From positions 62,001-126,000 of the IMG/VR virus record IMGVR_UViG_3300036770_007547: a stretch of DNA of 64,000 nucleotides; one strand, 5' to 3'. Positions 19,558 to 44,464 of the stretch are shown here, in pieces. Within the stretch, counting starts at the first letter, position 1. Each line of letters begins with the position of its first letter. Below the pieces are notes generated by a model. That model was not told the DNA's origin, searched no databases, and was given only the letters and a program-made list of their open reading frames with translations. The translations under genes and the position numbers were made by a program.

Positions 19558-19566
19558 GAGCTTCTC

Positions 19567-21644: not shown

Positions 21645-23012
21645 CTATTTTTTTGCTAGTTCTAGGAGTCTTGCTAGATGCCGCTCGATGCTTTCGCTGC
21701 TCATGTTGGATGGTCGTGTCATCATGACACCGTCGGTGTCGAGATTTTCATCGGTGGGTTGCTGATTGTCGGGAATGTCAATGTCTATGCCTAGTTCGGA
21801 TAGCCGATCCTGGATCAACGGGCGTGCGTCTGCGTCTGCGTCTTTTTTTGCCAACTCACCGAGGCGATCAAACAACTCATCGTCGCCCAATATCCCGTCT
21901 AGGATGGAAGTGACATTGGATGCATCTGGGCCCACTGGCAAAGGTTGGGCCAGGAGTTCTTCCAATTGTTTCCGGGATTGTGGAGTGTCTGGTAACGCCC
22001 ATGTGCCTTCCAGCATGCGTTGGGTCCAAGAATCAAACTCGTTGACTTCTTCCATGTAGTCGCTGTCACTGACAGCCTGGCCAGACAGTGTGCCAGCCAC
22101 TCTCGCCAACACCGGCAATGCTTCTTCGATGCGATGATCGATGTTTCTCTCTACAAACATGTTGCGTATGTTTTCTACTTCGGGCTGGGTGGAATCGACT
22201 GCGGATGGATCAAATTTTTCTCGTTCTTCGCGATAACCTCTTTGGCCCAGCATTTTCCTGGTCTTGGTTTTCAAGGCCTGATAATGACGTATGGCTGCTT
22301 CACGCACTCGATTGGCTTTTTCATCGTAGTCGCGCTTGTCACTGGCACGCAAAAATCTAGACAGCACCGACAACTCGTTCACCATTTCATTGATGTGATT
22401 GCCGAACAGATCATAGGGGGTACCACCTTCGCTGACGTGTCGGGCCAACAGTTTACCATGGGTGAGATTGCGGCTGGGCACACGAAAACGCTCGCCTTCG
22501 GCTGTTTCAATGAACAAACTTTCGATGGCACGATATCTAGCTTCGCCCTCGCCGAGGTCACGAGAATGCTTGATCATGAGTCGTGTCTGCTTGGGCTGGT
22601 CGCTGTAGCTGATGTTTTTCTTCTTGCCATAATAACCTTCGAACAAACCTTCACGTATGGCGGCCATGCCCTTCATGGTATATTTCAAACGATTGAGATT
22701 GTTGACCCGGAAGTTCAAGAGATTGCGTGTAGAAAACTTTTTGATCTGTTCCAGGAACGCATACCATTGCTGTTTGTCATCGCCTTCCATGCTCTTGCCG
22801 AGATTGTCACCAAAATAAAGCTCGACACTGTTGTTGTTGTCAAACAAGATCACCACTGTGCCGTAGTTCTTGGCCGGAGTTTTCCAATCAAATGACAGCA
22901 ATTCAGCTTCACTGGGATCTTCCACGGGTTTGCCCGAGCTGTCTAGAGTCTCGATGTCTAGATCTCGTGTCACCAATAGATCAAAGAGTTCTTTTTGCGG
23001 CGTGTTTTCCAT
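21645..23012 (-). CDS. Hypothetical (probably head-associated) protein downstream of the terminase
   Basis: 455-aa ORF with its own TAAATA promoter; LFE/MLE sites and C-terminal RLLELAK motif shared with the internal-protein block. Confidence 0.7.
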   Translation of the reverse strand: MENTPQKELFDLLVTRDLDIETLDSSGKPVEDPSEAELLSFDWKTPAKNYGTVVILFDNNNSVELYFGDNLGKSMEGDDKQQWYAFLEQIKKFSTRNLLNFRVNNLNRLKYTMKGMAAIREGLFEGYYGKKKNISYSDQPKQTRLMIKHSRDLGEGEARYRAIESLFIETAEGERFRVPSRNLTHGKLLARHVSEGGTPYDLFGNHINEMVNELSVLSRFLRASDKRDYDEKANRVREAAIRHYQALKTKTRKMLGQRGYREEREKFDPSAVDSTQPEVENIRNMFVERNIDHRIEEALPVLARVAGTLSGQAVSDSDYMEEVNEFDSWTQRMLEGTWALPDTPQSRKQLEELLAQPLPVGPDASNVTSILDGILGDDELFDRLGELAKKDADADARPLIQDRLSELGIDIDIPDNQQPTDENLDTDGVMMTRPSNMSSESIERHLARLLELAKK

Positions 23013-23026: not shown

Positions 23027-24592
23027 CTACATGACAACAACAAAGGGCAAGGGCTCGATGATGCTGTCCTGGTGATCACGCATTTGTGCGTCTAGGTCAG
23101 TGTGGTAACTCTGCAAAACCTGCAACATCCTTATCACGAGGATGGTAGACATGACCAAATCGTCGGTCTCGCCTGCTTTGGCTGCATAACCAGCGCCCGA
23201 TGCCACAAAGTTCTTGAGTTCGCTCACCAAATTCCGGCTGTGTATCTTCATGCGGCCGCTTTCCACGAGATTTTTTAGTTTGGCACATGCAGCGAGTTTG
23301 GGCTTGTTGGTGGTGTTGAATCCTTTGCGGAATCTACGGGAGCCGCCCGCACCGGGTTCGCTGAGGAAGTAGCCCGGAATATTTTCTTCTCCGTATTCAG
23401 CTATGGATATCAAGGCAGCTTCGCCGATGCTGTTGTTTTCTACCGAATAATAGATACCACTGGGATTCTGTACCACATCATTGATATGGACCATGATGTC
23501 TCGCAAGATCCTGATCTGCGTGGGTATGTCAGTGCGATTGTGGCGCCATTCGGCCACCTGCTCGGTGCTGTTGGCTTCATAGACTTGGATGGCTGCAGGA
23601 TCACCGCCAGTGCCCAGGCTGGGATCCAGTCCAATCACGTAGATACGATCTTTTTGCGGTTGCTTGTACCATCGCACTTCACCGGTTTTGTAAATCGGAT
23701 CATGCCCTTCGAGATCCACCAATTTGGCGGGTGCGATCAATGTTTCATCTGCGATGATGAATTCGCAGTCCATTTCGCGACGGAATCGATCCACGCCCAA
23801 TGCTGCCCGTTGTTGCTGTGCCCAAGTTTCATCGCGATCAGGGTGTTCGTTCCAAAAAGCCCGATAAGCACGGAATCCGTTCATGCCAACTTCGGTGGGA
23901 TTTCCGTATTCATCGATGCATCGGTTGGCACCTTTCCACAAGAGGGCGAACTGATCCTCGTCGCTGTTGGGTGTTGATGTGATGATGGCTTTACCGCCTG
24001 TGGCCAATGTGGGCGAGATCGAAGTCCAGAATTCCGTGGCTATGGTGGGTCGCACGAAGGCAAACTCGTCAGCGTAGAGCAGCGAGATACTCATGCCTCG
24101 GCCAGTGTTTTCAGTTGTGGTCTGGCTCACGATCCTGCTGCCGTTGTCAAACTCCAGGCTGCCTTTGTTGTAGCTGGTTACACCTGCACGGATATGATCT
24201 GGACAGTTTTCATAGGCATATCGCACACGTTGCATGATCTCTTGTGCGCCGAGATATTTGTGTGCTGCTACCAGGATGGTAGAGTCGGGTATGAACATAG
24301 CATACCACAAGAGATACCCGGCCGCAGATGTTGACTTACCAGTCTGCCTGGGCATCATGGATATGCTGAATCGATACTGGTGATAGGTGTCTATGAGCCG
24401 ACGTTGATATTCAAACGGATGGTACTGCATGCGTCCCCGGGTGGGATGCTGTATGTAAAAGAAGTTGTCCATGAAGTACATGGGCCCGGTATCGGGATCA
24501 GCACAGGCCGCGAACTCTCGTATCTGCTCGTCGGTGTAGATCGAGCTTTCGTGCGGATTTTTGATGAGGGCGACTTCGGTGTTCTTGGCCAT
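23027..24592 (-). CDS. terL: Terminase large subunit (T4 gp17-like)
   Basis: PRQTGKS Walker A, LLYADEFAFV Walker B, ITSTPN, GLDPSLGTGGD, DDLVMS. Confidence 0.96.
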   Translation of the reverse strand: MAKNTEVALIKNPHESSIYTDEQIREFAACADPDTGPMYFMDNFFYIQHPTRGRMQYHPFEYQRRLIDTYHQYRFSISMMPRQTGKSTSAAGYLLWYAMFIPDSTILVAAHKYLGAQEIMQRVRYAYENCPDHIRAGVTSYNKGSLEFDNGSRIVSQTTTENTGRGMSISLLYADEFAFVRPTIATEFWTSISPTLATGGKAIITSTPNSDEDQFALLWKGANRCIDEYGNPTEVGMNGFRAYRAFWNEHPDRDETWAQQQRAALGVDRFRREMDCEFIIADETLIAPAKLVDLEGHDPIYKTGEVRWYKQPQKDRIYVIGLDPSLGTGGDPAAIQVYEANSTEQVAEWRHNRTDIPTQIRILRDIMVHINDVVQNPSGIYYSVENNSIGEAALISIAEYGEENIPGYFLSEPGAGGSRRFRKGFNTTNKPKLAACAKLKNLVESGRMKIHSRNLVSELKNFVASGAGYAAKAGETDDLVMSTILVIRMLQVLQSYHTDLDAQMRDHQDSIIEPLPFVVVM

Positions 24593-25269: not shown

Positions 25270-25482
25270 TTATTTAACGGGCCGCTCACCGGTGAGGTAA
25301 GGAAGACTGAACCACAATTGGAACCATTCGGGAGTTCCGGGTTGGATGTTTTGATCTCGCATGATACGAGCTTTTTCAGTGCCGGTGTAGCTGATGTTGC
25401 TACCAGCAGTGGGTCGAGACGGAGGTTGGGAGTAGACCCCTTGGCCTACTCCGCTGAGACGTCGCAGCTCATCCAGTGTCAT
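25270..25482 (-). CDS. Small hypothetical protein
   Basis: MTLDELRRLSG...IQPGTPEWFQLWFSLPYLTGE; ATGA overlap with the nuclease stop. Confidence 0.7.
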   Translation of the reverse strand: MTLDELRRLSGVGQGVYSQPPSRPTAGSNISYTGTEKARIMRDQNIQPGTPEWFQLWFSLPYLTGERPVK

Positions 25483-25904
25483 TGGCACCAGCTGGATTTT
25501 TTCTCGCCGTGGTAAGGGCGCGCCAGGCCGTTGGCTATGAGACCTTGCGTGAGATCCTGTCCGCCCACGCGAACTGCGCCCAGGATACGACCACCATATT
25601 TGTCCCAACCGACGATGTCTATCTCTACCGGCTGACCTGAAGCGATGAGGCTCTTGGTATAAGCCGACGCACGTTCAGCCAAGGCAGCCTCTTGTGGGCA
25701 TTGGGCACGATGTCCTTTTTCCGGCGTATCTACGCCCAAGACTCGTATAGAAAGTTTTTGTTTGAGTTCGGGTGGAAGGAAGCGTGCTTCGATTTCGATG
25801 GTATCACCATCGATCACTCTCAACACTTTGACCGGATAAGGATTGGCCGTCGCCGAGGACATCATTGAAACCGAGATCATTGCTGCTAGAAAAAATTTTT
25901 TCAT
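25479..25904 (-). CDS. Thermonuclease (SNase-like) with an N-terminal signal peptide
   Basis: RVIDGDTI, IRVLGVDTPE, DKYGGRIL, LIANGLA; MKKFFLAAM...ATA signal. Confidence 0.9.
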   Translation of the reverse strand: MKKFFLAAMISVSMMSSATANPYPVKVLRVIDGDTIEIEARFLPPELKQKLSIRVLGVDTPEKGHRAQCPQEAALAERASAYTKSLIASGQPVEIDIVGWDKYGGRILGAVRVGGQDLTQGLIANGLARPYHGEKKSSWCQ

Positions 25905-25919
25905 CGTGATTCCTTTCTG

Positions 25920-27599
25920 TTATTCGATGATTTGGCCATTGACCACGCTGCGCCAGTTGGTACCGTCTGAATAGGCCGGTACTGCTCCGCCGCTGGCATC
26001 GGTGACAAACACCATCTGGCCAGCTGGTGTTACGCCCGGAAGTGTGTTGATCCTGAATGCTGGCAACACAAATTTACTGGGTACTATCACACCTGATAAT
26101 ACCACTCCTCCAAGATTGAGTTGTGTGGCTACTACTTCTAATACTTCGCCTAGATTTTCTATGTTGTTGGCCAACTGTACTACCTCACCAAAATCGCTGC
26201 CGTCGGTCCAGGGATAGTTGTTGGGTTGTGCCAGAGAAAATGTCAATGTGCTGTCGGTGGCAGTGATCTGCATGCCTACGTTTTGATTGGCTGGCCCCAC
26301 TGCTGCAAAGGTCACGGTACTGAGTGGTGCATTGGCGATCACCGAATTGCCGTTGGCCACTGTGATGTTGCCAAAGGAATTTGAGCCCGATATACCAGTG
26401 AGTTGGCTTCCGTTGCCAACAAAAACATTGGCAGTGATAGTGCCCGAAGCAGTGATGTCTGCTGCTTCAACATTGCCGGCCACCACGATGGTATCGCTGT
26501 CAATGGTGGTAGTTGTACCACGCACAGTGAGATTGCCTTCGATGATCACAGTACCGGTGCTGCCGTCAGCAGCGGGATCTATGGTTATGATCGAATTGGC
26601 GCTGGTGATGCGATCACCTTCTATCACCACATTGCCCACGGTTATGACACCGGTGTTGGCAGTGAGGTTTCCGGTCACAATCACATTGGCGAATTCGCTG
26701 TCCTGGGTGGTGGCAGCATTGGCCACAGCATTGGCATTGGCCACTCCGTTTGAAGTGGCTATGGGTATGAATTTGCCGGCTGGGTTGATGAGCACTGCTG
26801 TGGGACTGGGATTGTCGTTGGTTACCGGAGGTATCAATAAAATGCCGGCCGTGGCATCGGTCTTGATCACAGCTCCACCAAGATCTATGGTGTTGCCGGC
26901 CAGGTAAATGCTGTTCCAACGCAGATCAGCAGATCCGAGATTGTAGGTGACATTGGCTGTGGGCACGATGTTGCCGCCCACGGTCATGTTGGCACCATCA
27001 AAGGTGAGATTGCTACTGCCCGATAATTCACCATCGTTGTTGATTTGTATGGCGTTGGATTCGCCACCTGCTACGATGCTAGAAACAGTGACCGTGACGT
27101 CTGTGCCCGATGCTGTGGCTGTCACAGCGTTGCCCACAAAGTTAAAACTGCTCACCGAAGAAGTGAGTTCTACGTTTGAGTTGCTGACAGAGATGTTGGC
27201 CGAGCCTGAGGTCTGAGCTACCCATGACAGATTGCCGGTGCCATCGGTTTTCAGCACATAGTTGGCCGATCCGCCTTGTATTGTGACATTGGATACATCG
27301 CCGAGATTGATGGAACTGGTTACCGTGATGTTGTTGGCAGTTAGGGTGGTGTTGTTTGTATCATACACCAAGTCCGGGCTACCACCAAAGATGCCGGCAT
27401 CGTTGTACTGTATCTGTGTGTTTGACCCACCTGGCGAACTATTGCTGCTGCCACCGGTCACCACTGCTCCACCCGGTGTACCATCGTAGACACGAATGGT
27501 ATTGGTTATGGGGTCGTACCAGAGACGGCCATCTTGACCAATATAGTCAACACTGACTACTTTGTTGTTGCGACTGGTGCGGAATTCTTGGATGGCCAT
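25920..27599 (-). CDS. Virion fibre-like protein with an Mtd_N-like N-terminus
   Basis: YIGQDGRLWYDP.TN.IRVYDG.PGG; PGGSNTQIQYND; YNLGS..LRW..IYL; GNGSQLTG. Confidence 0.65.
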   Translation of the reverse strand: MAIQEFRTSRNNKVVSVDYIGQDGRLWYDPITNTIRVYDGTPGGAVVTGGSSNSSPGGSNTQIQYNDAGIFGGSPDLVYDTNNTTLTANNITVTSSINLGDVSNVTIQGGSANYVLKTDGTGNLSWVAQTSGSANISVSNSNVELTSSVSSFNFVGNAVTATASGTDVTVTVSSIVAGGESNAIQINNDGELSGSSNLTFDGANMTVGGNIVPTANVTYNLGSADLRWNSIYLAGNTIDLGGAVIKTDATAGILLIPPVTNDNPSPTAVLINPAGKFIPIATSNGVANANAVANAATTQDSEFANVIVTGNLTANTGVITVGNVVIEGDRITSANSIITIDPAADGSTGTVIIEGNLTVRGTTTTIDSDTIVVAGNVEAADITASGTITANVFVGNGSQLTGISGSNSFGNITVANGNSVIANAPLSTVTFAAVGPANQNVGMQITATDSTLTFSLAQPNNYPWTDGSDFGEVVQLANNIENLGEVLEVVATQLNLGGVVLSGVIVPSKFVLPAFRINTLPGVTPAGQMVFVTDASGGAVPAYSDGTNWRSVVNGQIIE

Positions 27600-27605
27600 T
27601 GGGGT

Positions 27606-27923
27606 TTAACCCCCTGCTGGCTGTGTGGGCGGAGTAAAGATGGCAGCGAGTTTGCGTAATCGATCAATCTCTTGATCAGATGCTAGTTCTTGGGTTTGTT
27701 CGGGAGTGGGTTCTTCGGTGACATCATCTGTGGTGGGACCCACAGCATCGCGCATGATATCCAGCTGTTGTTGCAAGGGCGTGCTCCAGTTGGCTCGGCC
27801 ATCTTCACCATAGCTGATGCCAGGATTTACAACAGCGGGTTTTTCTTCGGTGGGAGACATCACGATCACATTCATGTTCTGTATGTTTACTGAACCAGAT
27901 CCTAGTATATCTTTGATGTTCAT
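27606..27923 (-). CDS. Small hypothetical virion protein (paralog of 29717..30058)
   Basis: MNIKDIL..., PLQQQLDIMRDAVG, RLRKLA; TAAGTA 6 nt before the ATG. Confidence 0.65.
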   Translation of the reverse strand: MNIKDILGSGSVNIQNMNVIVMSPTEEKPAVVNPGISYGEDGRANWSTPLQQQLDIMRDAVGPTTDDVTEEPTPEQTQELASDQEIDRLRKLAAIFTPPTQPAGG

Positions 27924-27932
27924 TTATTATAC

Positions 27933-29708
27933 TTATGCCCAGTTTCCTATTGAGACATTGGCCCCAGTGGCACCAATAGGCCAAACTTCGATACTGGATC
28001 CGGCAGTGACTAAACTTCCGGCACCGGGCAAGCCGGTGAATCCGATCTGCGGGAACCAGGTGCCGCCTGTGGTGACATTTATCTTGCCCTGTACAGTGAG
28101 ACTGTAATAGCCAGCACCATTGAGTGATGCAGTGACAGTGACCGCAGTGCCAAAATTGGTGGTCAACACATTGCGCACCACGTTGGGCGCGGTGAGAGTA
28201 CCCAAGCCCGCAGCAGCAGTAGTCAGGGTCTCGTAGGTGTGTCTGGCCAGGGTAGCAGTACCACCTAGAGCATACTGCAAGGCGATGTTGTTGGCAGTCT
28301 TGTATACGGTAGATTGAATGCGGTAGGCATATCGGGTGTTTGAACTCAAGGTCACGCTGGCGCCCAGCAGGGTCTGCGGCGCGGTCTGATCCACGATGTT
28401 GTAGTCCGCGTTGATCACGTAGATCTGTTCGGTGACTATGAGACCGCGCTCGCTGTCTTGTGGTGTGGCATAGAACACGCGACCATCATAGTTCATGCCG
28501 CCTGCGATGGGAGAGGTGGTGACCACTCCTGTGGTAAACACCAGAGGTGCTATGTTGGCCGTGCCCGCTGGCAAGGTCACATAAGAGTTTACATTACCAG
28601 CTGAAATGTTGCCAGTGGTGGATATCAAGCCGGTGCTGGATATCAACCCACCATCGCTGAGTATGAGGTTCCCACCTGCGATGTTGCCCGTGGCAGTGAT
28701 GTTGCCAGCAGTATTGAATTGCGTGGCAGTGACACCGTTGGCCACTGTGATATTGGCCACATCTACTCTCGATGTAGCTGCTGATCCCACTGGGGTCACA
28801 GTAAACACAATTTCACTGCCTTGTGCTGTGGCAGTTTGATTTTCTAGAGCCGCCATTGAGATCTGTGCCATGGCCACATTGCCCACATTGCCGCCACCGG
28901 CATTGGTGGCCGCAGTGGCATTGATGCGTAACACATCTTGGCCGGCCAGCACCTGTGTGGGTGCGGTCACATTGCCGTTCCAGCGCCGTGCCACCCATGA
29001 TACATAGTCGCCGTTGCCGTCGTAGTAAAGGCGGCAGGGTGTGTCTAGCTGCCCGGTCACATGCAACATGGTACCCGGTGTGCCCGGAGCGATGGAATTG
29101 CCTGTGGTGGATCCCACGATTTCCACTGCACCCAGTAAGGGATCAGTGTTGGAGACCAAGATACTAATCTGTCCATCATTGGATGCCTGGAAATAACGAT
29201 TGGCCACATTGGGCGGCAAACCGTTGGTTCTATAAAATCCTATGTTGCCGATCAACTGTATTTCTGCCGAACCTTGTGTGGCCAAGATCATGTTCTCATC
29301 TAGATTCACTATGGTCAGCACATTGTTGTTGGCAAAGAAGTTACCAAAGCTCACTGGTAAGTTGGCCGAGTCGATGGTGAGCAGCCCGATGTTGCTGATT
29401 TCAACACCGGGACCGGGTATGATACCACCGATCTTGTTGGTGGATGCAGGTGATATATTGCCGGAAATGACGAGATTGCCTGTGACTGTGATATTGCCTG
29501 ATGTGGATGTTACGGCATTGAGTGTGACTGTGTTAGCCGTGATGTTGGCACCAGTGGCCAGGTCCACAGGAATACCTCCCACAGTGGCGCCGTCTGATGC
29601 ATAAAGGCTGTTGGTGTCGGGATTGTACCACAGGCGGCCCAGCTGGCCTACATAGGTGTTGCCATCAAGGTTGTTGTCACGGCTGGTAAAAAAATTCTGG
29701 ATGGCCAC
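27933..29708 (-). CDS. Virion fibre-like protein with an Mtd_N-like N-terminus
   Basis: MAIQNFFTSR...YVGQLGRLWYNPDTN..Y.SDG.T.GG; G/T/N-rich beta repeats. Confidence 0.65.
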   Translation of the reverse strand: MAIQNFFTSRDNNLDGNTYVGQLGRLWYNPDTNSLYASDGATVGGIPVDLATGANITANTVTLNAVTSTSGNITVTGNLVISGNISPASTNKIGGIIPGPGVEISNIGLLTIDSANLPVSFGNFFANNNVLTIVNLDENMILATQGSAEIQLIGNIGFYRTNGLPPNVANRYFQASNDGQISILVSNTDPLLGAVEIVGSTTGNSIAPGTPGTMLHVTGQLDTPCRLYYDGNGDYVSWVARRWNGNVTAPTQVLAGQDVLRINATAATNAGGGNVGNVAMAQISMAALENQTATAQGSEIVFTVTPVGSAATSRVDVANITVANGVTATQFNTAGNITATGNIAGGNLILSDGGLISSTGLISTTGNISAGNVNSYVTLPAGTANIAPLVFTTGVVTTSPIAGGMNYDGRVFYATPQDSERGLIVTEQIYVINADYNIVDQTAPQTLLGASVTLSSNTRYAYRIQSTVYKTANNIALQYALGGTATLARHTYETLTTAAAGLGTLTAPNVVRNVLTTNFGTAVTVTASLNGAGYYSLTVQGKINVTTGGTWFPQIGFTGLPGAGSLVTAGSSIEVWPIGATGANVSIGNWA

Positions 29709-29716
29709 CGTTTTTC

Positions 29717-30058
29717 CTAGTCGTCGAAAGGTTCGTCATCTACGGCCATCATCATAGGCACTATGCCGGCACGTCGCTGCATGATCGCGATCTCGTCTTC
29801 GCTGTCACCATCTGTGACTTCGTCAGCACGCTCGCCGTCGTACACATTGTCCACGCCCACAGCACGCTTGAGCAGTTCCAGCTTGAGCTGCAAGGGAGGT
29901 ACAAAATTGTCATCACCTTCGGCGGCATCGTTGTTCTTGGGAGCTTCTACCTGATCTCCGGCTGCTGTGCTGGAAAGTTCGGGCACAGGATTGTGATCAC
30001 GCACATCTTCTTGGTCCACTTCGTCGGCCAAGCGTCGCAATATGTCTGCTATCTTCAT
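29717..30058 (-). CDS. Small acidic hypothetical virion protein
   Basis: MKIADIL..., FVPPLQLKLELLKRAVG. Confidence 0.7.
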   Translation of the reverse strand: MKIADILRRLADEVDQEDVRDHNPVPELSSTAAGDQVEAPKNNDAAEGDDNFVPPLQLKLELLKRAVGVDNVYDGERADEVTDGDSEDEIAIMQRRAGIVPMMMAVDDEPFDD

Positions 30059-30420
30059 CTCGGATATCCTTGGAATGATTTTATCGGGCTCTCGGTGTTG
30101 ACGCCGGGCGGTTCGTGACTGTCTTCGCTGCCCACCAGTTCTTCGTATTCACTGTCCACTGTGGCAAACGCTGCCTTCATCATGTTGTGTTCTTCGCGTG
30201 TGTAGGGATGCGCTGAGTTGTAGCGATCCAACCACGAAGCCTGGGGCATGTCTACTGCCGCAGTGCTGCGTCCATCTGCACAGGCAGCAGCCATCATCAC
30301 ACGATTGAGATTGTAGGCTCGATCATTTAGACTGCGGAATCGTATGTTTCCGGTCATGGCTGCTTGAGCGGTGTGTCTCAGCCGACCGTTTCGTTCTGTG
30401 ATGAACTCGCGAGCTCTCAT
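30055..30420 (-). CDS. Probable internal head protein
   Basis: N-terminus MRAREFITE resembles the T4 capsid-targeting sequence; paralog of 30417..30758. Confidence 0.6.
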   Translation of the reverse strand: MRAREFITERNGRLRHTAQAAMTGNIRFRSLNDRAYNLNRVMMAAACADGRSTAAVDMPQASWLDRYNSAHPYTREEHNMMKAAFATVDSEYEELVGSEDSHEPPGVNTESPIKSFQGYPR

Positions 30421-30758
30421 CGTGGATATCCTGCGAAGGGTTTTACGATGCTCTGGATGTTGCCACCTGGTGGTTCCCGGCTGCCCACATCAGTGTGGAC
30501 TGTGGGCGTGACGCCAAACTGTTTGAAAGCAGCCAGCATCTTTTCCTGATCGGCCTTGGTGTAGGTTCCGATAAACATGTTGTCCCCGATCCAACTCACG
30601 TCGCTGTCTCCGACATCGAAACCAGGCGCAGATGCCATGAGCACACCCATCCTATACAATTCATAGTATTTGTCTACACCACCAAAGCCACCAGGTATAG
30701 GGTACTCTTGGTATGGGTGCATTTTTTTGCTTTCAACTATAAACTCACGAGCACGCAT
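30417..30758 (-). CDS. Probable internal head protein
   Basis: MRAREFIVES; shares S.EPPG.N..S..K.F.GYPR with its neighbour. Confidence 0.6.
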   Translation of the reverse strand: MRAREFIVESKKMHPYQEYPIPGGFGGVDKYYELYRMGVLMASAPGFDVGDSDVSWIGDNMFIGTYTKADQEKMLAAFKQFGVTPTVHTDVGSREPPGGNIQSIVKPFAGYPR

Positions 30759-30759
30759 G

Positions 30760-31041
30760 TTAGCCCGCCTTGACTGCGTTTTTGCCCGAGCTCGTGGTTC
30801 CTAGTTCTTCGGCTGTGAAATTGGCGCCGGTGATGGTGAGCTGATTGCCTACGCCCACCCAAACATCGCTGCTCCAATTGGCCGGGATCGACGCAGCATT
30901 GCTGTAGATGTTGCCGGTGGTGGGAGTTCCATAAATCATGTTGACATTGTAGGTCACAGCGGTGTTTCCCGTGGTGATCCTGCATTTGTCAGTGTACCAA
31001 CTCTGGGCGCTCACTGATGTATAGACGTTTGCCTGTGCCAT
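30760..31041 (-). CDS. Small hypothetical virion protein
   Basis: 93-aa T/N/G-rich ORF with AAGGA SD. Confidence 0.7.
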   Translation of the reverse strand: MAQANVYTSVSAQSWYTDKCRITTGNTAVTYNVNMIYGTPTTGNIYSNAASIPANWSSDVWVGVGNQLTITGANFTAEELGTTSSGKNAVKAG

Positions 31042-31058
31042 TTATTATAGTTCCTTTC

Positions 31059-32033
31059 TTACCACTTGCGGCAGCTCCAGTAACGTGCCTTGGTGCGCGG
31101 ACCGGGATTGTCACAATTATGCCGTGCCCGGAAGCTGCGCCGACGTGCTGGATTTGATTTTTTGATGCGCATGGTCTTGTCACCAAAATTGACTTTTTTC
31201 ACATTGCCAGTCTTGGGATCCTTGACATAGACCTTGAACTTTTTGACATCGCCTTGCATGGGTTTGCCCAACTGTACCTTGCGGCCTTGATATTCGGCTT
31301 CGGACATTTCTTCAAAATCAGGATCGCCGCCGTATTCTTCGACTAGCTTGTCCCATAGTATTTCGATCATCCGATCATAGTCGTTGATGACATCGTTCAT
31401 GCCTTTAGATGCTAGTTCGTCTTTGAGTTCTTCCATCATGTGTTGCAAGACATCTGCCGTACCAGGTCCCAGGTCACCTTCGAGAGCAGCGATTAGATCT
31501 TCCTCGTCTCCGCGATTGGCCAGGCTACGCAGATCGATGTCTATGTCACTCATTCGACCTTCGTCCACGGTGGTGGCTTGATTGGGATTGTCCATGGCAT
31601 TCACTGCTGCATCATCTGCGGCCTTGGCGGCAAGAGGGTCATTGTCGTTGGCGTTCTCGGACATGCGGCTTTCTAGGCCAGCACGACTGCGTATGAGATC
31701 TAACACAGCATCAAACGCCGATCCCGCATCGTGTTGTGGGGCAGGTTCGCTGCCGCATTCATCGATCGATTCTTCTTCTAGAGTGTAGCCTTGACCGCGA
31801 CTGGATCCCACCGCGCCATAGCGCCGTACAGTTTCGAGAGTTATACCATACTGCTCCATGAGTTGGATCATACGATCATCGGCCTGTAGCACCACGCCAT
31901 CGGCAGTGGTTTCAACGATGTGGCTTTCGATCAGGCATTCCTCGCGGATGTTGATGGCAAAGCTGTCGCCCACTGCTGGTGTGTCGATCCAAGTCTCGCA
32001 TTCAGAAATATACTCTTTGAGAGTACGCATCAT
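31059..32033 (-). CDS. Probable internal head protein with a basic C-terminal domain
   Basis: MRTLKEYISE start; acidic middle; AEYQGRKV...KVNFGD...SFRARHNC...ARYWSC. Confidence 0.65.
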   Translation of the reverse strand: MMRTLKEYISECETWIDTPAVGDSFAINIREECLIESHIVETTADGVVLQADDRMIQLMEQYGITLETVRRYGAVGSSRGQGYTLEEESIDECGSEPAPQHDAGSAFDAVLDLIRSRAGLESRMSENANDNDPLAAKAADDAAVNAMDNPNQATTVDEGRMSDIDIDLRSLANRGDEEDLIAALEGDLGPGTADVLQHMMEELKDELASKGMNDVINDYDRMIEILWDKLVEEYGGDPDFEEMSEAEYQGRKVQLGKPMQGDVKKFKVYVKDPKTGNVKKVNFGDKTMRIKKSNPARRRSFRARHNCDNPGPRTKARYWSCRKW

Positions 32034-34663
32034 GAAATCCTCTTGTAGAGATCAAGCATGCGCTGATACTGATCTTGTTCCACCTGCTCGGCAATGGCGC
32101 CTAGATTGACCTGACCCGACGGAGCTCGGCCAAGATCACGCATGGCCATGGGGTTGTCACCCATGTTGTTGGGGTTCACTTGCAGCTTGGGACCATTGAC
32201 GCCGCCAGCCAACCCGTAGTCTCGGGTGGCACCCAGTTCAGCATAAGCGGGATCGGGCTTGTTGGCCATCTCTTCTTCCACCATTTCGCCTTGGCTGCAA
32301 CCGGCTTCGTGCATGCCAGCACCACCGCACTCACTGCAGGTGTCTTCGGCATCGATGCGCTGATAACCCGAGCTACCAAACAAACCTGCCAGTTTCAAAA
32401 GCTCGCCCAGCTTGGCAGCATCCTCGCCAGTGGCTGTGACAGTGACCGAGGGATCGCCTTGTGTGCTGGCGTTCATGGTAGCATTGACTTCTTCGCCCAA
32501 GATCTCCGACATCTTGTTCTGGAAACTTTCTTCCAATCGACCCTCGTACACGCCTTTGCCAAACTGCATGCCGCCTTTCTTGCTCTTGGGAGCTTCGTCA
32601 CTGGTGGCCACTGAACCTGCTGTGGTTGTTTCTTCCACGCTTTCGTCCTTCTTGGCCGGTAGATCTTTTTCTTTGGTCTTGGCAAACTTCTTGAGTTCTT
32701 TGGTGGGCATGTCGCTCATCTCTTTTGATGCGCCACGCAGTTCGCTCTTGGGGATGTCACCCTTCTTGGCAGCGTAGGCTATGCCAGCTGCCTTGCGCTG
32801 TGCTTTGCTTACAGCTTTTTCGCTGACAGCTTCTTCATCGAAGAGATCAGGCTGTGTGATCTTTACTTTGTTGGGAGCAAACTTTTGGATGAACTCTGCT
32901 CTCTGCCATTCGCCCTGCTCAAACTTGCTTAATACAGCATCTTTGAGTTCGCGGAAGCTCATGTCTCCCGAGTCCCATTTGTTTTGTATCCTTATGAGAG
33001 CATCACCCAAGTATGGATTGTCGTCGAATACACCGTCGGCATGATATGATAACCAATCAGAAATCTTGCGACCGGTTTTGTCATCAACATCACGGAACGC
33101 ACCTTCCATCTGTATTTCACTGTCGTCCTCGGGGCGATTGGCTTTGAGGTAGTCACGTGCCGAATCGATGTACTCTTGTGCTAGAGTGATCTTCTTCTGC
33201 ACCCACTCTGGCAGGTTCTCGTTGGCATCCAGGATGCTTTGCAGTTCTTCGGCAGCATCTTCGATGCTGCGGGCCTGGCTCTGGGCCATCTCACCTTCTT
33301 CGTCGTACTCGTCTTTGTCGTAGTCTTCGCCCATGGTCTTCTTGGCAGGCAGCTTGGTCTGCTTGGCTTTTTCTAGAGCACGCCGCTCAAGATCGTCGAG
33401 CTTTTTGTGATCTCGGGCCAACTGCTTGCGATCAGCAGCACGCTGTCCTGTGTTTTCAGGATCGCCAATGGCTTCTTCAACTTCTTCTTCACGTATAGCA
33501 GCACCACGGGCTAGTTTGCTGAGTCCAGTGGATTTGGCACCGAGGCGCTTGCCACCACCTGAACCTTTGGGACGTCCACGACCGCGTTTTTCGCCCGGCA
33601 CTACATGCGCAGCCTTCTTCTTGCCGGGTTTGAGGTTGCCCCACTCGTCGTAGTCATCGTCCTCGCCGCCTTCGTCGTCGCGATCGCTGCGATATCCGTA
33701 TTTCTTGTGTATGTTGCGCTCGCTTTCAGGATCCTTGATACCAGGCTTGGCACCTTTCTGCATGGCTTTGACAAGATTGATGTCCAGGGCTTCGTTGACA
33801 AATGCGCTGGCCATCGACACAGCATTGGATTTGTTCTCAGTGAAGTGGCGAGACATCATGCCATCGGCATGCAAACGCACTTGATACTCGTTGTATTCAC
33901 GATCAACAAACACTTCAGCTCGCCGGTCGTTGCCTTCCAGCACTTTTACCAGGGCCATGCTTTCTTTCATCTTCTTCTTTTTGTCTTGGGCAGCTTTCTT
34001 CATGCTTTCTTTCTTGTTGCCGTCCTTGTCAAGGTCGATGTAATCGGGCTTGGCTGCTTCTTTCACCTGATACTTTTTGCCATCCACTTCAAATTCTTGT
34101 TTGCCTGCGGCCTTGGCCTTGGCCAGCTCGCCGGAAAACTCGTTGCCTTCTTCCATGTCGGCTTCATTGACATCTTCTTTTCTCAGCTTGGCTAACACAG
34201 CACCAGCCACTTTCTCGCCGCGCTCTTTTGATCCATATCGCTCACCCGCTGACTTGGCTATCTTGGCAAACTGCTTGCCGGGCTTGCCGATGTCTTTGCC
34301 GGCGCGGGCTTTCTTGGCCGAATAATCACCGGTGCTGCCCTCTTTGACTTGGTCATGATCGGCATTGACCCATGCCAATACCTCATCATAATCGTAGCCC
34401 AATTTTTGTGCAGCCATTTCTTCGGCATCTTCTGGTTCAAGATTGCGATTCAATATCATCAGGTGCCGTTTTTTGCGTGCGATTTTGTCGTAGTCTGCTT
34501 GTGTAAATCCCTCGTCGCCTTCTTTCACCTGTTTGGCCTGTTTCGCGGCCTGTTTCATGGGCTCTGATTTGTCACCATCCTTGTCAAGGTCAATGAAGTC
34601 GGGTTTGCTGCCGCGGCCTTCCAGCAGATTCATTTTTGCGAGTATGTCGTACATGTTATCCAT
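32030..34663 (-). CDS. Large multi-module probable internal head polyprotein
   Basis: Two KPD.IDLDKDG repeats, AT-hook KRGRGRPKG, LPEWVQKKI module, KAVSKAQRKAAG module, many hydrophobic-X-E sites. Confidence 0.65.
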   Translation of the reverse strand: MDNMYDILAKMNLLEGRGSKPDFIDLDKDGDKSEPMKQAAKQAKQVKEGDEGFTQADYDKIARKKRHLMILNRNLEPEDAEEMAAQKLGYDYDEVLAWVNADHDQVKEGSTGDYSAKKARAGKDIGKPGKQFAKIAKSAGERYGSKERGEKVAGAVLAKLRKEDVNEADMEEGNEFSGELAKAKAAGKQEFEVDGKKYQVKEAAKPDYIDLDKDGNKKESMKKAAQDKKKKMKESMALVKVLEGNDRRAEVFVDREYNEYQVRLHADGMMSRHFTENKSNAVSMASAFVNEALDINLVKAMQKGAKPGIKDPESERNIHKKYGYRSDRDDEGGEDDDYDEWGNLKPGKKKAAHVVPGEKRGRGRPKGSGGGKRLGAKSTGLSKLARGAAIREEEVEEAIGDPENTGQRAADRKQLARDHKKLDDLERRALEKAKQTKLPAKKTMGEDYDKDEYDEEGEMAQSQARSIEDAAEELQSILDANENLPEWVQKKITLAQEYIDSARDYLKANRPEDDSEIQMEGAFRDVDDKTGRKISDWLSYHADGVFDDNPYLGDALIRIQNKWDSGDMSFRELKDAVLSKFEQGEWQRAEFIQKFAPNKVKITQPDLFDEEAVSEKAVSKAQRKAAGIAYAAKKGDIPKSELRGASKEMSDMPTKELKKFAKTKEKDLPAKKDESVEETTTAGSVATSDEAPKSKKGGMQFGKGVYEGRLEESFQNKMSEILGEEVNATMNASTQGDPSVTVTATGEDAAKLGELLKLAGLFGSSGYQRIDAEDTCSECGGAGMHEAGCSQGEMVEEEMANKPDPAYAELGATRDYGLAGGVNGPKLQVNPNNMGDNPMAMRDLGRAPSGQVNLGAIAEQVEQDQYQRMLDLYKRIS

Positions 34664-34674
34664 TTTGTGTATCC

Positions 34675-35274
34675 TTATTTCTGAAAGCCAGTGGCTGGAC
34701 GCGGGGGGCGTTTGATAGTGGTCATGGGACTGTTCACACCCATGGGAATATCATTTGTGGTTTCTGCAGGCTTGGTTTTGCCACCAGCAACGACAAACGT
34801 GGCATCAGCTGCTGAATTCTTGATCACTTTTTTGTCTTTGCCCACGGCTGCATAATCGCTGCTGGCTTCTTTTTGTTCTTTGGTGTCAGCAGGATATTCG
34901 GTGGTCAATAGATCTTTCTGACTTTCAATGCCCAACAGTTCACGATCCATGCCATTGGCCCAGTCGCGCTGTTGTATTACCAATCGATCGGGATCCAACC
35001 CCAACAGCTTGGCGATCTCTTGTATCTGTGGCGGTGTGGCTGGATAGCGCAGAGTAACGTCCACGATATTCACTGCTTGGTTGTTGAAGGCAGGAAAATC
35101 TTGTGGCTTGGACATGACCGGTGTTTTCTTGAATTCGCCTACAGTCACTGGATCAAACTTTTTGAGTTGATCTCGGAACTGTGAGGTGAATCCAGCCGGC
35201 ACATCACCCACGATTTTGATGCGATAATCGTGTGTTTTTTGGCTCTCGGTTAGGTATTGTGCGAATGTCTTCAT
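34675..35274 (-). CDS. Probable head-associated protein
   Basis: MKTFAQYLTES, close to T4 MKTYQEFIAE; late promoter at 35293-35298. Confidence 0.65.
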   Translation of the reverse strand: MKTFAQYLTESQKTHDYRIKIVGDVPAGFTSQFRDQLKKFDPVTVGEFKKTPVMSKPQDFPAFNNQAVNIVDVTLRYPATPPQIQEIAKLLGLDPDRLVIQQRDWANGMDRELLGIESQKDLLTTEYPADTKEQKEASSDYAAVGKDKKVIKNSAADATFVVAGGKTKPAETTNDIPMGVNSPMTTIKRPPRPATGFQK

Positions 35275-35820: not shown

Positions 35821-36258
35821 TTACCGCTTTTTGGCACCGTTGCGGAACAATGAATCTTCGTTGAGCACTCGGAACACTATGCCAGCACGCCGGCACCAGG
35901 CCTGGGCTGCCTGCCATTTGGCGTGATTTATGGCCACCACCATGCGGTCTCGTTCGCTCATCTTGCCTTCGATGAGACTCTGCTTTCTCGGTTTGATCTC
36001 AATGATCTCGGTGCATATCTTGTTGTTGCGAGTGCGATATCGCATGAACACATCGGGCACATAACTTGACATCTTACCGGTCAAGGGGTTGCGGTACTTG
36101 ATGGCTATGGCTTCGCTGGCCCATTCCAGCACAGCATCGTTGTTGTCGCAGAACTGGAAGAAACTCCACTCCCATCCTGATCGATAACGAGGATTTCCTT
36201 TACCTACATATTTCTGTGGATTCTTTGGCACGAATGTGCCCTGGGCAAAGTTGCTCAT
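35821..36258 (-). CDS. gp4: Head completion nuclease (T4 gp4 / TnsA-N-like)
   Basis: PKNPQKYVG..., YRSGWE..F..FCD.N..VLEWASE, YVPD, EIKP, N.AKWQAA. Confidence 0.9.
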   Translation of the reverse strand: MSNFAQGTFVPKNPQKYVGKGNPRYRSGWEWSFFQFCDNNDAVLEWASEAIAIKYRNPLTGKMSSYVPDVFMRYRTRNNKICTEIIEIKPRKQSLIEGKMSERDRMVVAINHAKWQAAQAWCRRAGIVFRVLNEDSLFRNGAKKR

Positions 36259-44156: not shown

Positions 44157-44185
44157 ATTATAGCATGACTTGGGAAGCCAGTCTA
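44157..44185 (-). promoter_or_regulatory. Sigma70-type early promoter, leaderless transcript
   Basis: TAGACT-17 nt-TATAAT with TG extension; ATG 6 nt after the -10 box. Confidence 0.75.
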
Positions 44186-44464
44186 GCGATAAAGGTTGAG
44201 TAGTTTGAGCAGTTTGGCCTTGGGATTTATCCGCTTGGTACGCTTGGCCTTGCGTGCCTGTCGAACCTTGGTGCGCTGGCGTGTTTTTTTCATGCGTTGT
44301 GCTTGGGCAACATCTGGCGCCGACGAACAGTCGGACACCTTGGGCACTGTACGGTTGCGCCTAGGACCAGATTCACAGCGCCAACGCAGGGTCACTTTGC
44401 CGGTCTTGGGATTCCGCCGCCACACCATGCGATGCTCGTCCAAGATGAATTCGCTGGCTCTCAC
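44183..44464 (-). CDS. Small very basic probable internal head protein
   Basis: MRASEFILDE N-terminus (GTG start), R/K-rich, RC.SGPR..R.V. Confidence 0.65.
   Translation of the reverse strand: MRASEFILDEHRMVWRRNPKTGKVTLRWRCESGPRRNRTVPKVSDCSSAPDVAQAQRMKKTRQRTKVRQARKAKRTKRINPKAKLLKLLNLYR

What the first reader, a model, noticed from the sequence alone, without database searches (positions are those of the whole stretch)
29717..35274. Block of proteins with T4-like capsid-targeting N-termini
N-termini: MKTFAQYLTE (35274), MRTLKEYISE (32030), MRAREFIVE (30758), MRAREFITE (30420), and elsewhere MRASEFILDE (44464). Established: T4 internal proteins use MKTYQEFIAE, removed by the gp21 protease after Glu. 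A second short motif, (R/E)L(R/L).L(A/S)G-like, recurs in 21645, 25270, 27606 and 32030. Inference: a set of uncharacterised packaged and probably injected proteins, candidates for anti-defence or host-takeover factors, with two targeting signals.
Basis: partly seen in the sequence, partly recalled or inferred. Interest (0 to 1): 0.6.

Follow-up and report, generated by a model that had tools for sequence, protein, structure and literature searches.

The report
T4-type capsid-targeting leaders, uncultured jumbo phage
A distant, uncultured relative of phage T4 puts nearly the same ten-residue "address label" that T4 uses to load proteins into its head onto at least five otherwise unrelated proteins, which marks them as likely head-packaged proteins, though neither packaging nor injection has been shown.

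Summary
The window lies in a 222,775-bp IMG/VR phage contig, a distant T4-like jumbo myovirus. Its nearest cultured relatives are Pseudomonas PA5oct, Atu_ph07 and 121Q.

All five N-termini are real and sit at gene starts on the minus strand. The motif [KR][TAS]x1-4[EQ][FY][IL]x1-2E occurs five times in the 70,238-aa predicted proteome, always at residue 2-3. About 0.0025 N-terminal matches are expected from composition.

The leaders match T4 IPII/IPIII (MKTYQEFIAE) at the residues T4 genetics maps to targeting (4, 7) and processing (8, 10). One degenerate DNA pattern retrieves both T4 ipII/ipIII and this clade's genes.

The leaders sit on four body families with no detectable similarity and are conserved across 43 related contigs. 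In complete relatives they also head GNAT acetyltransferases. The genome encodes a gp21-type (Peptidase_S77) prohead protease with a T4-like head module. The PA5oct orthologue of the 199-aa protein was found in virions by MS.

The second motif meets the stated pattern in only 2 of the 4 named ORFs. It does resemble the invariant C-terminus of the scaffold protein (…IKRLAGL*).

Verdict: new members of a known kind. Packaging and cleavage are well inferred. Injection and anti-defence roles are untested.

The parts
34675..35274 (-). 199-aa protein with the leader MKTFAQYLTE|S. The mature part has pI 9.0. It is the conserved core member of the block.
   Evidence: ORF. M1 K2 F4 Q6 Y7 L8 E10 S11 are invariant in 19 orthologues down to 29% identity. 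The PA5oct orthologue EST35_0202 is annotated 'structural protein, ESI-MS/MS'. It matches phrog_14802, a virion structural protein family. The AF2 model has the leader as a helix at residues 4-10 (pLDDT about 61), then a ferredoxin-like domain at 15-118 (pLDDT 83-90) and a disordered tail.
32030..34663 (-). 877-aa Lys/Glu-rich protein without the T4-type leader. Its N-terminus is MDNMYDILAKMNLLEG. It has two KPD(F/Y)IDLDKDG repeats, a DUF3008 domain, and an internal conserved ATGEDAAKLGELLKLAGLFG (second motif).
   Evidence: Pfam DUF3008 at 2e-17. The motif …ATDEDA..LA.ILK[LM]AG[LM] is conserved about 100 aa from the C-terminus in all orthologues of the related loci. The N-terminal class M-x-[KN][IM]-x-D-I-L is found.
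31059..32030 (-). 323-aa acidic protein with the leader MRTLKEYISE|C. After the leader comes a conserved domain of about 50 aa with further [LI]xE sites. The middle is variable and the C-terminus is Cys-rich and basic.
   Evidence: Orthologues range from 155 to 524 aa and keep the leader (MKTLKDYLTE, MKSLQEYITE, MKKLADYIAE and others) while their bodies vary. The C-terminus matches phrog_7595 at 7.5e-13.
30760..31041 (-). 93-aa protein (MAQANVYTS…), a conserved block member without a leader.
   Evidence: It is present at the same position in the related loci. It has no family assignment.
30417..30758 (-). 113-aa protein with the leader MRAREFIVE|S. It is a tandem paralogue of the next gene.
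   Evidence: It uses different codons from its paralogue for the same leader residues.
30055..30420 (-). 121-aa protein with the leader MRAREFITE|R.
   Evidence: Among 120 homologues, M1 is kept in 120/120, E5 in 115, F6 in 107, [IVL]7 in 116 and E9 in 119. Thirteen homologues carry the alternative leader MKINEI[IV]xE on the same body. In the AF2 model, leader residues 2-11 have pLDDT below 50 and are not packed on the body.
29717..30058 (-). 113-aa acidic protein with the N-terminus MKIADILRRLADE, a third leader-like class. Near the C-terminus it has …IAIMQRRAGIVP, a form of the second motif.
   Evidence: Orthologues read MKISDLLRRAAD… and …IKRNAGI….
44183..44464 (-). 93-aa protein with a GTG start and the leader MRASEFILDE|H. 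The mature part has pI 12.0 (28 K+R in 83 aa). It lies between the neck-protein and exonuclease genes.
   Evidence: An AGGA sequence lies upstream of the GTG, and an in-frame stop lies two codons upstream of it.
27606..27923 (-). 105-aa acidic protein with the N-terminus MNIKDILGSG (third class) and a loose look-alike of the second motif, EIDRLRKLAAIF.
25270..25488 (-). 72-aa ORF with the N-terminus M(P)MTLDELRRLSGV, a strict match to the second motif.
   Evidence: Gene status is uncertain, because the longer ORF 25270-25608 overlaps the nuclease gene.
21645..23012 (-). 455-aa protein beside the large terminase gene. It ends …ERHLARLLELAKK*. Relatives end …LRQLSGMMKS*, …LKRLALM* or …LVHLSGLKK*.
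   Evidence: It is a homologue of PA5oct EST35_0206, a structural protein detected by MS. It matches phrog_13484, a virion structural protein family.
35821..36258 (-). T4 gp4-type head completion protein. It serves as the context marker at the upstream edge of the block.
   Evidence: phrog_218 at 9e-40 and Pfam TnsA-like at 5e-19. Synteny with PA5oct is shown.

Best explanation
The five proteins carry N-terminal propeptides of the T4 capsid-targeting-sequence (CTS) type.

Proposed mechanism, by analogy with T4:
- The 9-10-residue leader (M-[KR]-[TA]-x-x-[EQ]-[FY]-[IL]-x-E) gives the newly made protein affinity for the scaffolding core. In this phage the core would consist of the gp22-like scaffold, the gp67-like acidic protein and the protease.
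- The protein is therefore enclosed when the major capsid protein (MCP) shell assembles around the core.
- The phage's gp21-type serine protease (Peptidase_S77) then cuts after the Glu of the [LI]-x-E site.
- The leader leaves the head and the mature protein stays among the packaged DNA. It is probably expelled into the host with the DNA.

The leader is modular. In this clade it sits on at least six unrelated bodies, and in complete relatives it also heads enzymes (GNAT acetyltransferases).

Shown here: the motif, its exclusive N-terminal position, its protein-level conservation, its modularity, the protease and head module, and the match to T4's mapped residues.

Inferred: targeting, cleavage, retention and injection.
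For: 1. Motif statistics. There are 5 of 5 occurrences at residue 2-3 in 70,238 aa, against 0.0025 expected.

2. Match to T4. IPII/IPIII read MKTYQEFIAE|A and IPI reads MKTFKEF… in NC_000866. The T4 CTS is these 10 residues, cleaved once by gp21 (PMC8442874). Residues 4 and 7 govern targeting, residues 8 and 10 govern processing, and the cleavage motif is L/I-x-E (PMC9026906). In the 199-aa family, F4, Y7, L8 and E10 are invariant down to 29% identity. In the 121-aa family, E5-F6-[IVL]7-x-E9 (= T4 E6-F7-I8-x-E10) is kept in 107-119 of 120 homologues.

3. One DNA pattern (ATGARRNCNYWN(N)6TWYNTNNNNGAR) finds T4 ipII, ipIII and gp61.1, and one gene in cyanophage P-TIM68. This clade's 10-mer leader genes fit it by inspection of the codons printed. 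A narrower form (YTN at codon 4) found 2 such genes in G001 and 1 in G002. Reversed controls gave 0-1 hits.

4. Modularity. In the 43 loci related through the 199-aa gene there are six leader-bearing body families with no BLAST link. hhalign of the 199-aa against the 121-aa family gives probability 1.3%. Complete relatives hold 6-8 leader genes, including GNAT acetyltransferases (PF00583, 29.1 bits) and a DUF6321 protein.

5. Selection acts on the protein. The tandem paralogues and the orthologues use different codons for the same leader. Leader column entropy is 0.2-0.9 bits against 1.0-1.8 just downstream.

6. Machinery. PF03420 Peptidase_S77 scores 87.8 bits at contig 137791-138216. The GE(L/V)(N/D)HP and GVSSRG motifs shared with T4 gp21 are present. 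The head module runs portal, small protein, gp67-like, protease, scaffold, MCP, and the MCP is 31% identical to T4 gp23. Head proteins themselves begin with [LI]xE-containing N-termini: MSQELLE, …ALME|GL, MNKFEQLIE and MALYLKE.

7. Physical hint. PA5oct orthologues of the 199-aa and 455-aa proteins were detected in virions by ESI-MS/MS.

8. Structure. The leaders are modelled as a short helix or an unpacked segment outside the folded body.
Against: - There are no virion, N-terminal or infection data for this uncultured phage.
- The PA5oct orthologue of the 199-aa protein reads MKSFRDYYDA and has no [LI]-x-E site. The cultured relatives Cassandra/PA5oct, Munch and 121Q have no match to either leader pattern. 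The only MS evidence therefore comes from a protein that may not be processed.
- In the 199-aa family the residues after the leader (F.YRIKIVGD) are also conserved, so the leader boundary is not sharp there.
- Only two of the mature proteins are basic like the T4 IPs (pI 12.0 and 9.0). The rest have pI 4.7-6.5.
- T4 gp22 and gp67/68 give no direct sequence hit in this genome. The core proteins are assigned by position and by annotation in 121Q.
- The motif regex was derived from the observed sequences, so its p-value is optimistic. The independent T4-derived pattern test mitigates this.
Confidence: 0.72

Rival explanations
1. The leader-bearing proteins are prohead core or assembly components, like T4 gp67 and gp68. 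They would be targeted and cut by the protease but then degraded or lost. They would not be retained cargo that is injected and acts on the host.
For: The phage's own gp67-like core protein starts MNKFEQLIE, and the scaffold, MCP and protease all carry N-terminal [LI]xE sites. The 323-aa family has several further [LI]xE sites (LIE, IVE, LME) in its conserved N-domain. Most of the mature proteins are acidic or neutral, unlike the T4 IPs. The block lies among the structural genes.
Against: The PA5oct orthologue of the 199-aa protein is found in mature virions. Cargo number and identity vary between close relatives, which is typical of accessory proteins and not of essential core proteins. Relatives attach the leader to GNAT enzymes, and such enzymes make poor scaffolds. 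The 93-aa protein with pI 12 looks like a DNA-associated internal protein.
Confidence: 0.15
2. The shared N-terminus has no targeting role. It could be an inherited N-terminal module from gene duplication, a translation-initiation or mRNA feature, or a signal for another process such as degradation or membrane association.
For: Two of the five genes are tandem paralogues. Short N-terminal motifs can reflect constraints on the start region.
Against: The bodies are unrelated by BLAST and by profile-profile comparison. Codons differ while residues are kept. The motif never occurs internally. The leader has no hydrophobic stretch that would suit secretion. The conserved positions are exactly those mapped in T4. 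Within one body family two different leaders (MRAREFIxE and MKINEIIxE) are interchangeable, which fits an address label better than part of a fold.
Confidence: 0.08
3. The likeness to the T4 CTS is convergent or coincidental, and this phage's protease has a different specificity. In that case the leaders would not be cut at the Glu.
For: The phiKZ and SPN3US proteases, which are also gp21 relatives, cut at S/A/G-x-E or A-x-E rather than L/I-x-E (PMC5694885). The cultured relatives nearest to this clade lack the leader.
Against: The protease is a clear S77 member above Pfam's cut-off. The MCP is a gp23 homologue. A leader-like start (MKSFTSFFTE|ARV, compare T4 …FIAE|ARV) also occurs in a cyanophage of the T4 superfamily. 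That favours inheritance across the superfamily.
Confidence: 0.05

Closest known systems
[quoted passage not shown]
   Same: - The leader is an N-terminal 9-10-residue segment with the same architecture: Met, a basic residue, a small residue, an aromatic or Leu, then E/Q-F/Y-I/L-x-E.
- The leader ends in an L/I-x-E site.
- It sits on otherwise unrelated proteins.
- The set of such proteins varies between relatives.
- A gp21-type S77 protease and a T4-like head module are encoded in the same genome.
- One member is small and very basic (pI 12), like IPII.
   Different: - The phage is very far from T4. MCP identity is 31%, and the nearest cultured kin, PA5oct, has only 38% sheath identity.
- There are two or three leader subclasses: a 10-mer MKTFxxYLxE, a 9-mer MRAxEFIxE and possibly MKIxDIL.
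- Most cargo proteins are acidic or neutral and reach 323 aa here and 542 aa in relatives.
- The genes are clustered in the late structural region next to gp4 instead of being scattered.
- No body is similar to any T4 IP.
- Packaging, cleavage and injection are untested.
Virion ('structural') proteins of Pseudomonas jumbo phage PA5oct, EST35_0202 to EST35_0207 (Arenbergviridae), and the Rak2/121Q-like jumbo phages
   Same: The gene order is shared: neck, dNMP kinase, sheath, tube, gp4, then the orthologue of the 199-aa protein, then TerL and the orthologue of the 455-aa protein. The head module and the scaffold with a C-terminal …L(A/S)G(I/L) motif are also shared.
   Different: PA5oct, Munch and 121Q have no T4-type leader by pattern search. 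The PA5oct orthologue starts MKSFRDYYDA. The PA5oct paper does not discuss propeptides or internal proteins.
Propeptide-bearing ejection proteins of phiKZ and SPN3US giant phages
   Same: In both cases head-internal proteins are incorporated through N-terminal propeptides that a gp21-related protease removes after Glu. Paralogues there also have identical N-termini (PMC5694885).
   Different: Those propeptides are mostly longer than 100 residues and the sites are A/S/G-x-E. Here the leaders are 9-10 residues with L/I-x-E, as in T4.

Membership tests
T4-type CTS-bearing internal head proteins | N-terminal leader of about 10 residues resembling MKTYQEFIAE, placed at the very start of the protein | tested here: met
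   The window has MKTFAQYLTE, MRTLKEYISE, MRAREFI(T/V)E and MRASEFILDE, all at residue 1. T4 sequences were read from NC_000866. A shared degenerate DNA pattern retrieves T4 ipII/ipIII; this clade's 10-mer leader genes fit it by inspection and were found with a narrower form of it.
T4-type CTS-bearing internal head proteins | Residues 4 and 7 (targeting) and 8 and 10 (processing) are the constrained positions (Mullaney & Black 1996, as summarised in PMC9026906) | tested here: met
   F4, Y7, L8 and E10 are invariant in 19 orthologues of the 199-aa protein. The equivalent F6, [IVL]7 and E9 are kept in 107-119 of 120 homologues of the 121-aa protein.
T4-type CTS-bearing internal head proteins | The leader ends in an L/I-x-E site cut by the prohead protease | tested here: inconclusive
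   The sequence sites are present: YLTE, YISE, FITE, FIVE and ILDE. Cleavage itself cannot be tested with these tools.
T4-type CTS-bearing internal head proteins | The genome encodes a gp21-type (Peptidase_S77) prohead protease and a T4-like scaffolding core | tested here: met
   PF03420 scores 87.8 bits, above the cut-off. The His and Ser motifs are conserved against T4 gp21. The scaffold and the gp67-like protein are assigned by position and by the 121Q and Munch annotation. There is no direct phmmer hit to T4 gp22, gp67 or gp68.
T4-type CTS-bearing internal head proteins | The same leader occurs on unrelated mature proteins (modularity) | tested here: met
   Six body families have no BLAST link. 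hhalign gives probability 1.3%. GNAT and DUF6321 bodies occur in relatives.
T4-type CTS-bearing internal head proteins | The mature protein is present inside the DNA-filled head | not testable with these tools
   The only indirect evidence is that PA5oct orthologues of the 199-aa and 455-aa proteins are annotated as detected by ESI-MS/MS.
T4-type CTS-bearing internal head proteins | The protein is ejected into the host with the DNA and acts there (for example IPI* against GmrSD, Alt on RNA polymerase) | not testable with these tools
   No function was found for the window's cargo proteins.
T4-type CTS-bearing internal head proteins | Small, highly basic proteins (IPI-III) | tested here: inconclusive
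   The mature 93-aa protein has pI 12.0 and the 199-aa protein pI 9.0. The other three have pI 4.7-6.5. T4 Alt shows that basicity is not obligatory.

The most novel reading that the evidence does not exclude
The second motif (Φ-x-[RKQ]-x-[AS]-G-[ILMV]) is a separate head-incorporation signal that copies the scaffold protein's own C-terminal docking peptide.

The gp22-like scaffold ends in …[IV]x[DAE][IL][KR]RLAGL* in all 120 listed close homologues, and in related forms in the cultured relatives: …ELRRLAGIK* in PA5oct-like Cassandra, …LERNAGIHKK* in Munch and …LDVLSGINKK* in 121Q.

Proteins that lack the T4-type leader carry the same peptide internally or at a terminus. These are the 877-aa protein, the 113-aa MKIADIL protein, the protein beside the terminase gene, and PA5oct EST35_0203 and EST35_0206. 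They could enter the prohead by occupying the scaffold's binding site on the capsid shell or on the core. The phage would then have two or three mechanistically different address labels for head cargo.
Probability: 0.25. Interest if true: 0.7.

Novelty: new member of a known kind. Interest (0 to 1): 0.5.

Why it matters
The T4 capsid-targeting sequence has been characterised experimentally only in T4; related T-even phages carry CTS-like proteins.

This finding shows a nearly unchanged leader in a very distant and abundant clade of uncultured T4-like jumbo phages. The prohead protease has more than 600 related IMG/VR stretches, and the scaffold has more than 7,000 homologues. A probable copy also occurs in a cyanophage.

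If the inference holds, three things follow:
- A 10-residue scan could list candidate head-packaged (and possibly injected) proteins directly from metagenomic genomes. The list would include enzymes such as GNAT acetyltransferases.
- It would give a concrete shortlist of candidates for counter-defence or host-takeover screens.
- It suggests the T4 CTS packaging tool may be portable across the superfamily.

The link between the scaffold C-terminus and the second motif is a new lead on how scaffold and cargo dock in T4-like proheads.

Tried and rejected
There is therefore no test of scaffold-tail or leader binding.
- Foldseek on the 199-aa model gave only generic ferredoxin-like (S6/HPPK) matches and uncharacterised phage proteins.
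- The 121-aa model gave no PDB match.
- The ESM Atlas gave no usable lead.
- Pfam and PHROGs gave no function for the leader proteins of the window. The ChaB hit (18 bits, cut-off 27) is rejected as sub-threshold.
- T4 IP bodies have no similarity to any protein of this genome.
- The T4 late promoter TATAAATA is not enriched: 1 match against 0.4 expected. Late expression is therefore inferred only from gene position.
- The PA5oct paper has no supplement held as text and no mention of propeptides.
- A full-text search for the leader strings and for RLAGL/LRRLAG found no phage paper except the T4 CTS itself.
- The scaffold homologue search listed only close relatives (71-100% identity). The wider range of the C-terminal motif rests on three cultured genomes.
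- The large representative-protein search, the sequencing-run tools and any non-standard genetic code were not used. None was needed.

Full report
**Context.** The window is bases 62001-126000 of a single 222,775-bp IMG/VR virus contig that CheckV estimates to be 64% complete. Almost all genes of the region lie on the minus strand. PHROGs and Pfam identify a T4-like myovirus structural region. It holds a neck protein, dNMP kinase, a 1134-aa tail sheath, tail tube proteins, a gp4-type head completion protein, the block in question, fibre-like proteins, a secreted nuclease, a methyltransferase, the large terminase and a gp32-like protein. No phage record is close at the DNA level. By tblastn of the sheath, the nearest cultured relatives are Pseudomonas jumbo phage PA5oct and its kin (38% identity), then Agrobacterium Atu_ph07, Sinorhizobium Phosso and Salicola SCTP-2. 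Gene order is syntenic with PA5oct from the neck protein to the terminase.

**Observation, first motif.** All five N-termini exist as stated, on the minus strand, at the first start codon after a nearby in-frame stop. A six-frame scan of the whole contig with M[KR][TAS]x1-4[EQ][FY][IL]x1-2E finds exactly these five. In my 251-gene, 70,238-aa proteome, the motif without the Met occurs five times, each at residue 2-3, and never internally. Composition-matched sampling expects 0.0025 N-terminal matches. The 113-aa and 121-aa genes are tandem paralogues and share a …GYPR C-terminus, so there are four independent body families.

**Observation, second motif.** The pattern as written fits only two of the four ORFs named. 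A relaxed form occurs 4 times against 1.5 expected here (p about 0.07), and 7 times against 2.2 in a complete relative (p about 0.015).

**Likeness to T4.** I read the T4 genes from NC_000866. IPII and IPIII start MKTYQEFIAE|A, IPI starts MKTFKEFTSTTTPVSTITE|A, gp24 starts MAKINELLRE|S, and gp23 is cut after …FLTE. The literature held here states three things:
- The CTS is these ~10 residues, cut once by gp21 (PMC8442874).
- Residues 4 and 7 matter for targeting and residues 8 and 10 for processing.
- gp21 cuts after L/I-x-E (PMC9026906).

The window's MKTFAQYLTE and MRTLKEYISE match position for position. MRAREFITE and MRAREFIVE are the same leader one residue shorter, with the T4 core EFIxE. 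In 19 orthologues of the 199-aa protein, down to 29% identity, the invariant N-terminal residues are M1 K2 F4 Q6 Y7 L8 E10 S11. In 120 homologues of the 121-aa protein, E5, F6, [IVL]7 and E9 are kept in 115, 107, 116 and 119.

A test independent of my regex used one degenerate DNA pattern for the 10-mer. It finds T4 ipII, ipIII and gp61.1 (MKTFKEFIKE), and one gene in cyanophage P-TIM68. It finds none in PA5oct-like Cassandra, Munch or 121Q, and reversed-pattern controls give 0-1 hits. This clade's 10-mer leader genes fit that pattern by inspection, and a narrower form of it found 2 in G001 and 1 in G002.

**The leader as a modular, protein-level signal.** The 199-aa gene brought in 43 related IMG/VR loci. 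Each full locus has two to four leader genes downstream of it. After the first 14 residues are removed, the leader proteins fall into six families with no BLAST link: 199 aa, 113-134 aa, a highly variable 155-524-aa family, 93 aa, 227 aa and 149-158 aa. Profile-profile comparison of the two best-sampled families gives probability 1.3%. Leader columns are much less variable than the following columns, at 0.2-0.9 against 1.0-1.8 bits. The tandem paralogues and the orthologues encode the same residues with different codons.

Within the 121-aa family, 13 homologues carry a different leader, MKINEI[IV]xE, on the same body. That is what one expects of an exchangeable address label.

Two relatives were examined in full: G001 (345 kb, CheckV completeness 99%) and G002 (352,754 bp, direct terminal repeats, 100%). 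Each carries 6-8 leader genes. Several lie in a second island, which in G002 sits at 54-74 kb. The bodies there include GNAT acetyltransferases (PF00583, 29.1 bits), a DUF6321 Cys-rich protein and a PF17338 (GP88) protein. The corresponding island may lie in the missing third of the present contig.

**Machinery.** The contig encodes a Peptidase_S77 (T4 gp21) protease at 137791-138216, at 87.8 bits and above the cut-off. It shares the GE(L/V)(N/D)HP and GVSSRG motifs with T4 gp21. The protease sits in a T4-order head module: portal, 72-aa protein, acidic gp67-like protein, protease, 363-aa coiled-coil scaffold, and an MCP 31% identical to gp23. The head proteins themselves begin with [LI]xE-bearing N-termini conserved across about 60 related loci: MSQELLE-S…ALME-GL in the MCP, MNKFEQLIE in the gp67-like protein and MALYLKE in the protease. 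This fits an L/I-x-E specificity.

**Physical hint.** PA5oct EST35_0202 (orthologue of the 199-aa protein) and EST35_0206 (orthologue of the 455-aa protein) are annotated as virion proteins found by ESI-MS/MS. EST35_0202, however, starts MKSFRDYYDA and has no L-x-E site. The PA5oct paper does not treat propeptides.

**Structure and cargo function.** In the AlphaFold2 model of the 199-aa protein, the leader is a short helix of modest confidence. It precedes a confident ferredoxin-like domain and a disordered basic tail. In the 121-aa model, the leader has pLDDT below 50 and is not packed on the body. Fold and language-model searches gave no function. Mature pI values are 12.0 (93 aa), 9.0 (199 aa) and 4.7-6.5 for the others.

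**Second motif.** The most informative result was unplanned. The scaffold protein ends …NVIAIKRLAGL*. This C-terminus is invariant as [IV]x[DAE][IL][KR]RLAGL in about 60 related loci and in 120 listed homologues. It is recognisable in cultured relatives: Cassandra …DELRRLAGIK*, Munch …LERNAGIHKK* and 121Q …LDVLSGINKK*.

The same peptide is conserved in several other proteins:
- The 877-aa protein carries …ATDEDA..LA.ILK[LM]AG[LM], about 100 residues from its end, in every orthologue.
- The 113-aa MKIADIL protein carries it near its C-terminus (QRRAGI, KRNAGI).
- Relatives of the 455-aa protein carry it at the C-terminus (…LRQLSGMMKS*).
- PA5oct EST35_0203 carries it at the N-terminus (MFNINDILRLAGV) and EST35_0206 carries it internally.

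In other phages the scaffold C-terminus docks on the coat protein. This is general knowledge, for example P22, and was not tested here. On that basis I propose, as inference only, that this motif is a docking peptide reused by some head proteins.

**A possible third class.** The N-terminal pattern M-x-[KN][IM]-x-[DE][IL][IL] is found on three proteins of the block, the ORFs at 27606, 29717 and 32030-34663, against about 0.15 expected. It resembles T4 gp24's MAKINELLRE and the MKINEII leader variant. The pattern is post hoc.

**Verdict.** Its reading as capsid-targeting, protease-removed propeptides is the best explanation (confidence about 0.7). Retention in the head and injection are plausible (about 0.4-0.5). 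An anti-defence or host-takeover role is open. The second signal is a lead, not a finding. This is a new set of members of a known kind of system, found in a distant and abundant uncultured clade. No paper in the library reports the CTS outside T4's closer relatives, nor in the PA5oct/Rak2 group.

Noticed in passing
contig 136555-137646 (minus), outside the window (window-equivalent 74555-75646); L145:1359-2447:-: The gp22-like scaffold protein ends in an invariant …IKRLAGL*. The motif is conserved across about 60 IMG/VR relatives and 120 listed homologues. It is recognisable in PA5oct-like (…RRLAGIK*), Munch (…RNAGIHKK*) and 121Q (…VLSGINKK*) scaffolds.
   Followed up: partly
window 18298-21568 (minus): A cluster of three genes sits between the gp32-like gene and the virion protein beside the terminase gene: an MFS transporter (PF07690, 2e-28), a hexapeptide-repeat acyltransferase and an AMP-binding (acyl-adenylate-forming) enzyme. 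This is unusual cargo for a phage structural region.
   Followed up: no
T4 NC_000866 18966-19130 (L165/L168): T4 gp61.1 is a 54-aa hypothetical protein next to the primase gene. It starts MKTFKEFIKE, a CTS-like N-terminus that the same DNA pattern picks up along with ipII and ipIII.
   Followed up: no
Prochlorococcus phage P-TIM68 KM359505 141186 (+), L170:1501: A 401-aa cyanophage protein starts MKSFTSFFTE|ARV (compare T4 …FIAE|ARV). It contains an HxGH-type nucleotidyltransferase motif (GRFNPPTIGHQKLL). It may be a CTS-bearing enzyme in Kyanoviridae.
   Followed up: no
G002 (IMGVR_UViG_3300023184_000024) 54-74 kb; L131, L134, L149: Complete relatives have a second island of leader-bearing genes. 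It includes two GNAT acetyltransferases, a DUF6321 protein, a 542-aa MKAREFITE protein and a PF17338 (GP88) protein that starts MKIKDLILKE. No equivalent was found in the 64%-complete contig that holds the window.
   Followed up: partly
window 32030-34663 (minus), residues about 19-48 and 205-235: The 877-aa protein has two copies of KPD(F/Y)IDLDKDG(D/N)K.E.MK.AA. The first copy is the only stretch of the region with a DNA-level match to a cultured phage: 76% over 88 nt to a hypothetical protein of cyanophage P-TIM68 that carries the same peptide.
   Followed up: partly
window 30055-30420 (minus): The ESM Atlas holds this protein only from residue 22 on, read as Met. At least one automatic gene call therefore cut off the leader, and leader scans on public protein sets may miss members.
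   Followed up: no
window 25920-27599 and 27933-29708; 55606-57090, 58468-58953, 59282-61198 (minus): There are two sets of paralogous fibre-like proteins with shared N-termini. One set starts MAIQ(E/N)F.TSR.N…GRLWY(D/N)P. The other starts MPL(D/Q)FPA(S/N)P.L(N/D)(D/E)TY(S/T)F..KTW.(W/Y)NG.
   Followed up: no
L039 16151-18212 and L043 15383-17596: In some relatives the large terminase gene is split into two ORFs with an intervening ORF (MAMIYKENTRGYKV…, MEVENTRFEVLTTDGF…). This suggests an intein or a homing-endonuclease insertion. The window's terminase gene (23027-24592) is intact.
   Followed up: no
window 25479-25904 (minus): A 141-aa nuclease (phrog_452) with an N-terminal signal-peptide-like hydrophobic stretch (MKKFFLAAMISVSMMSSATA) is conserved next to the block in relatives.
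   Followed up: no
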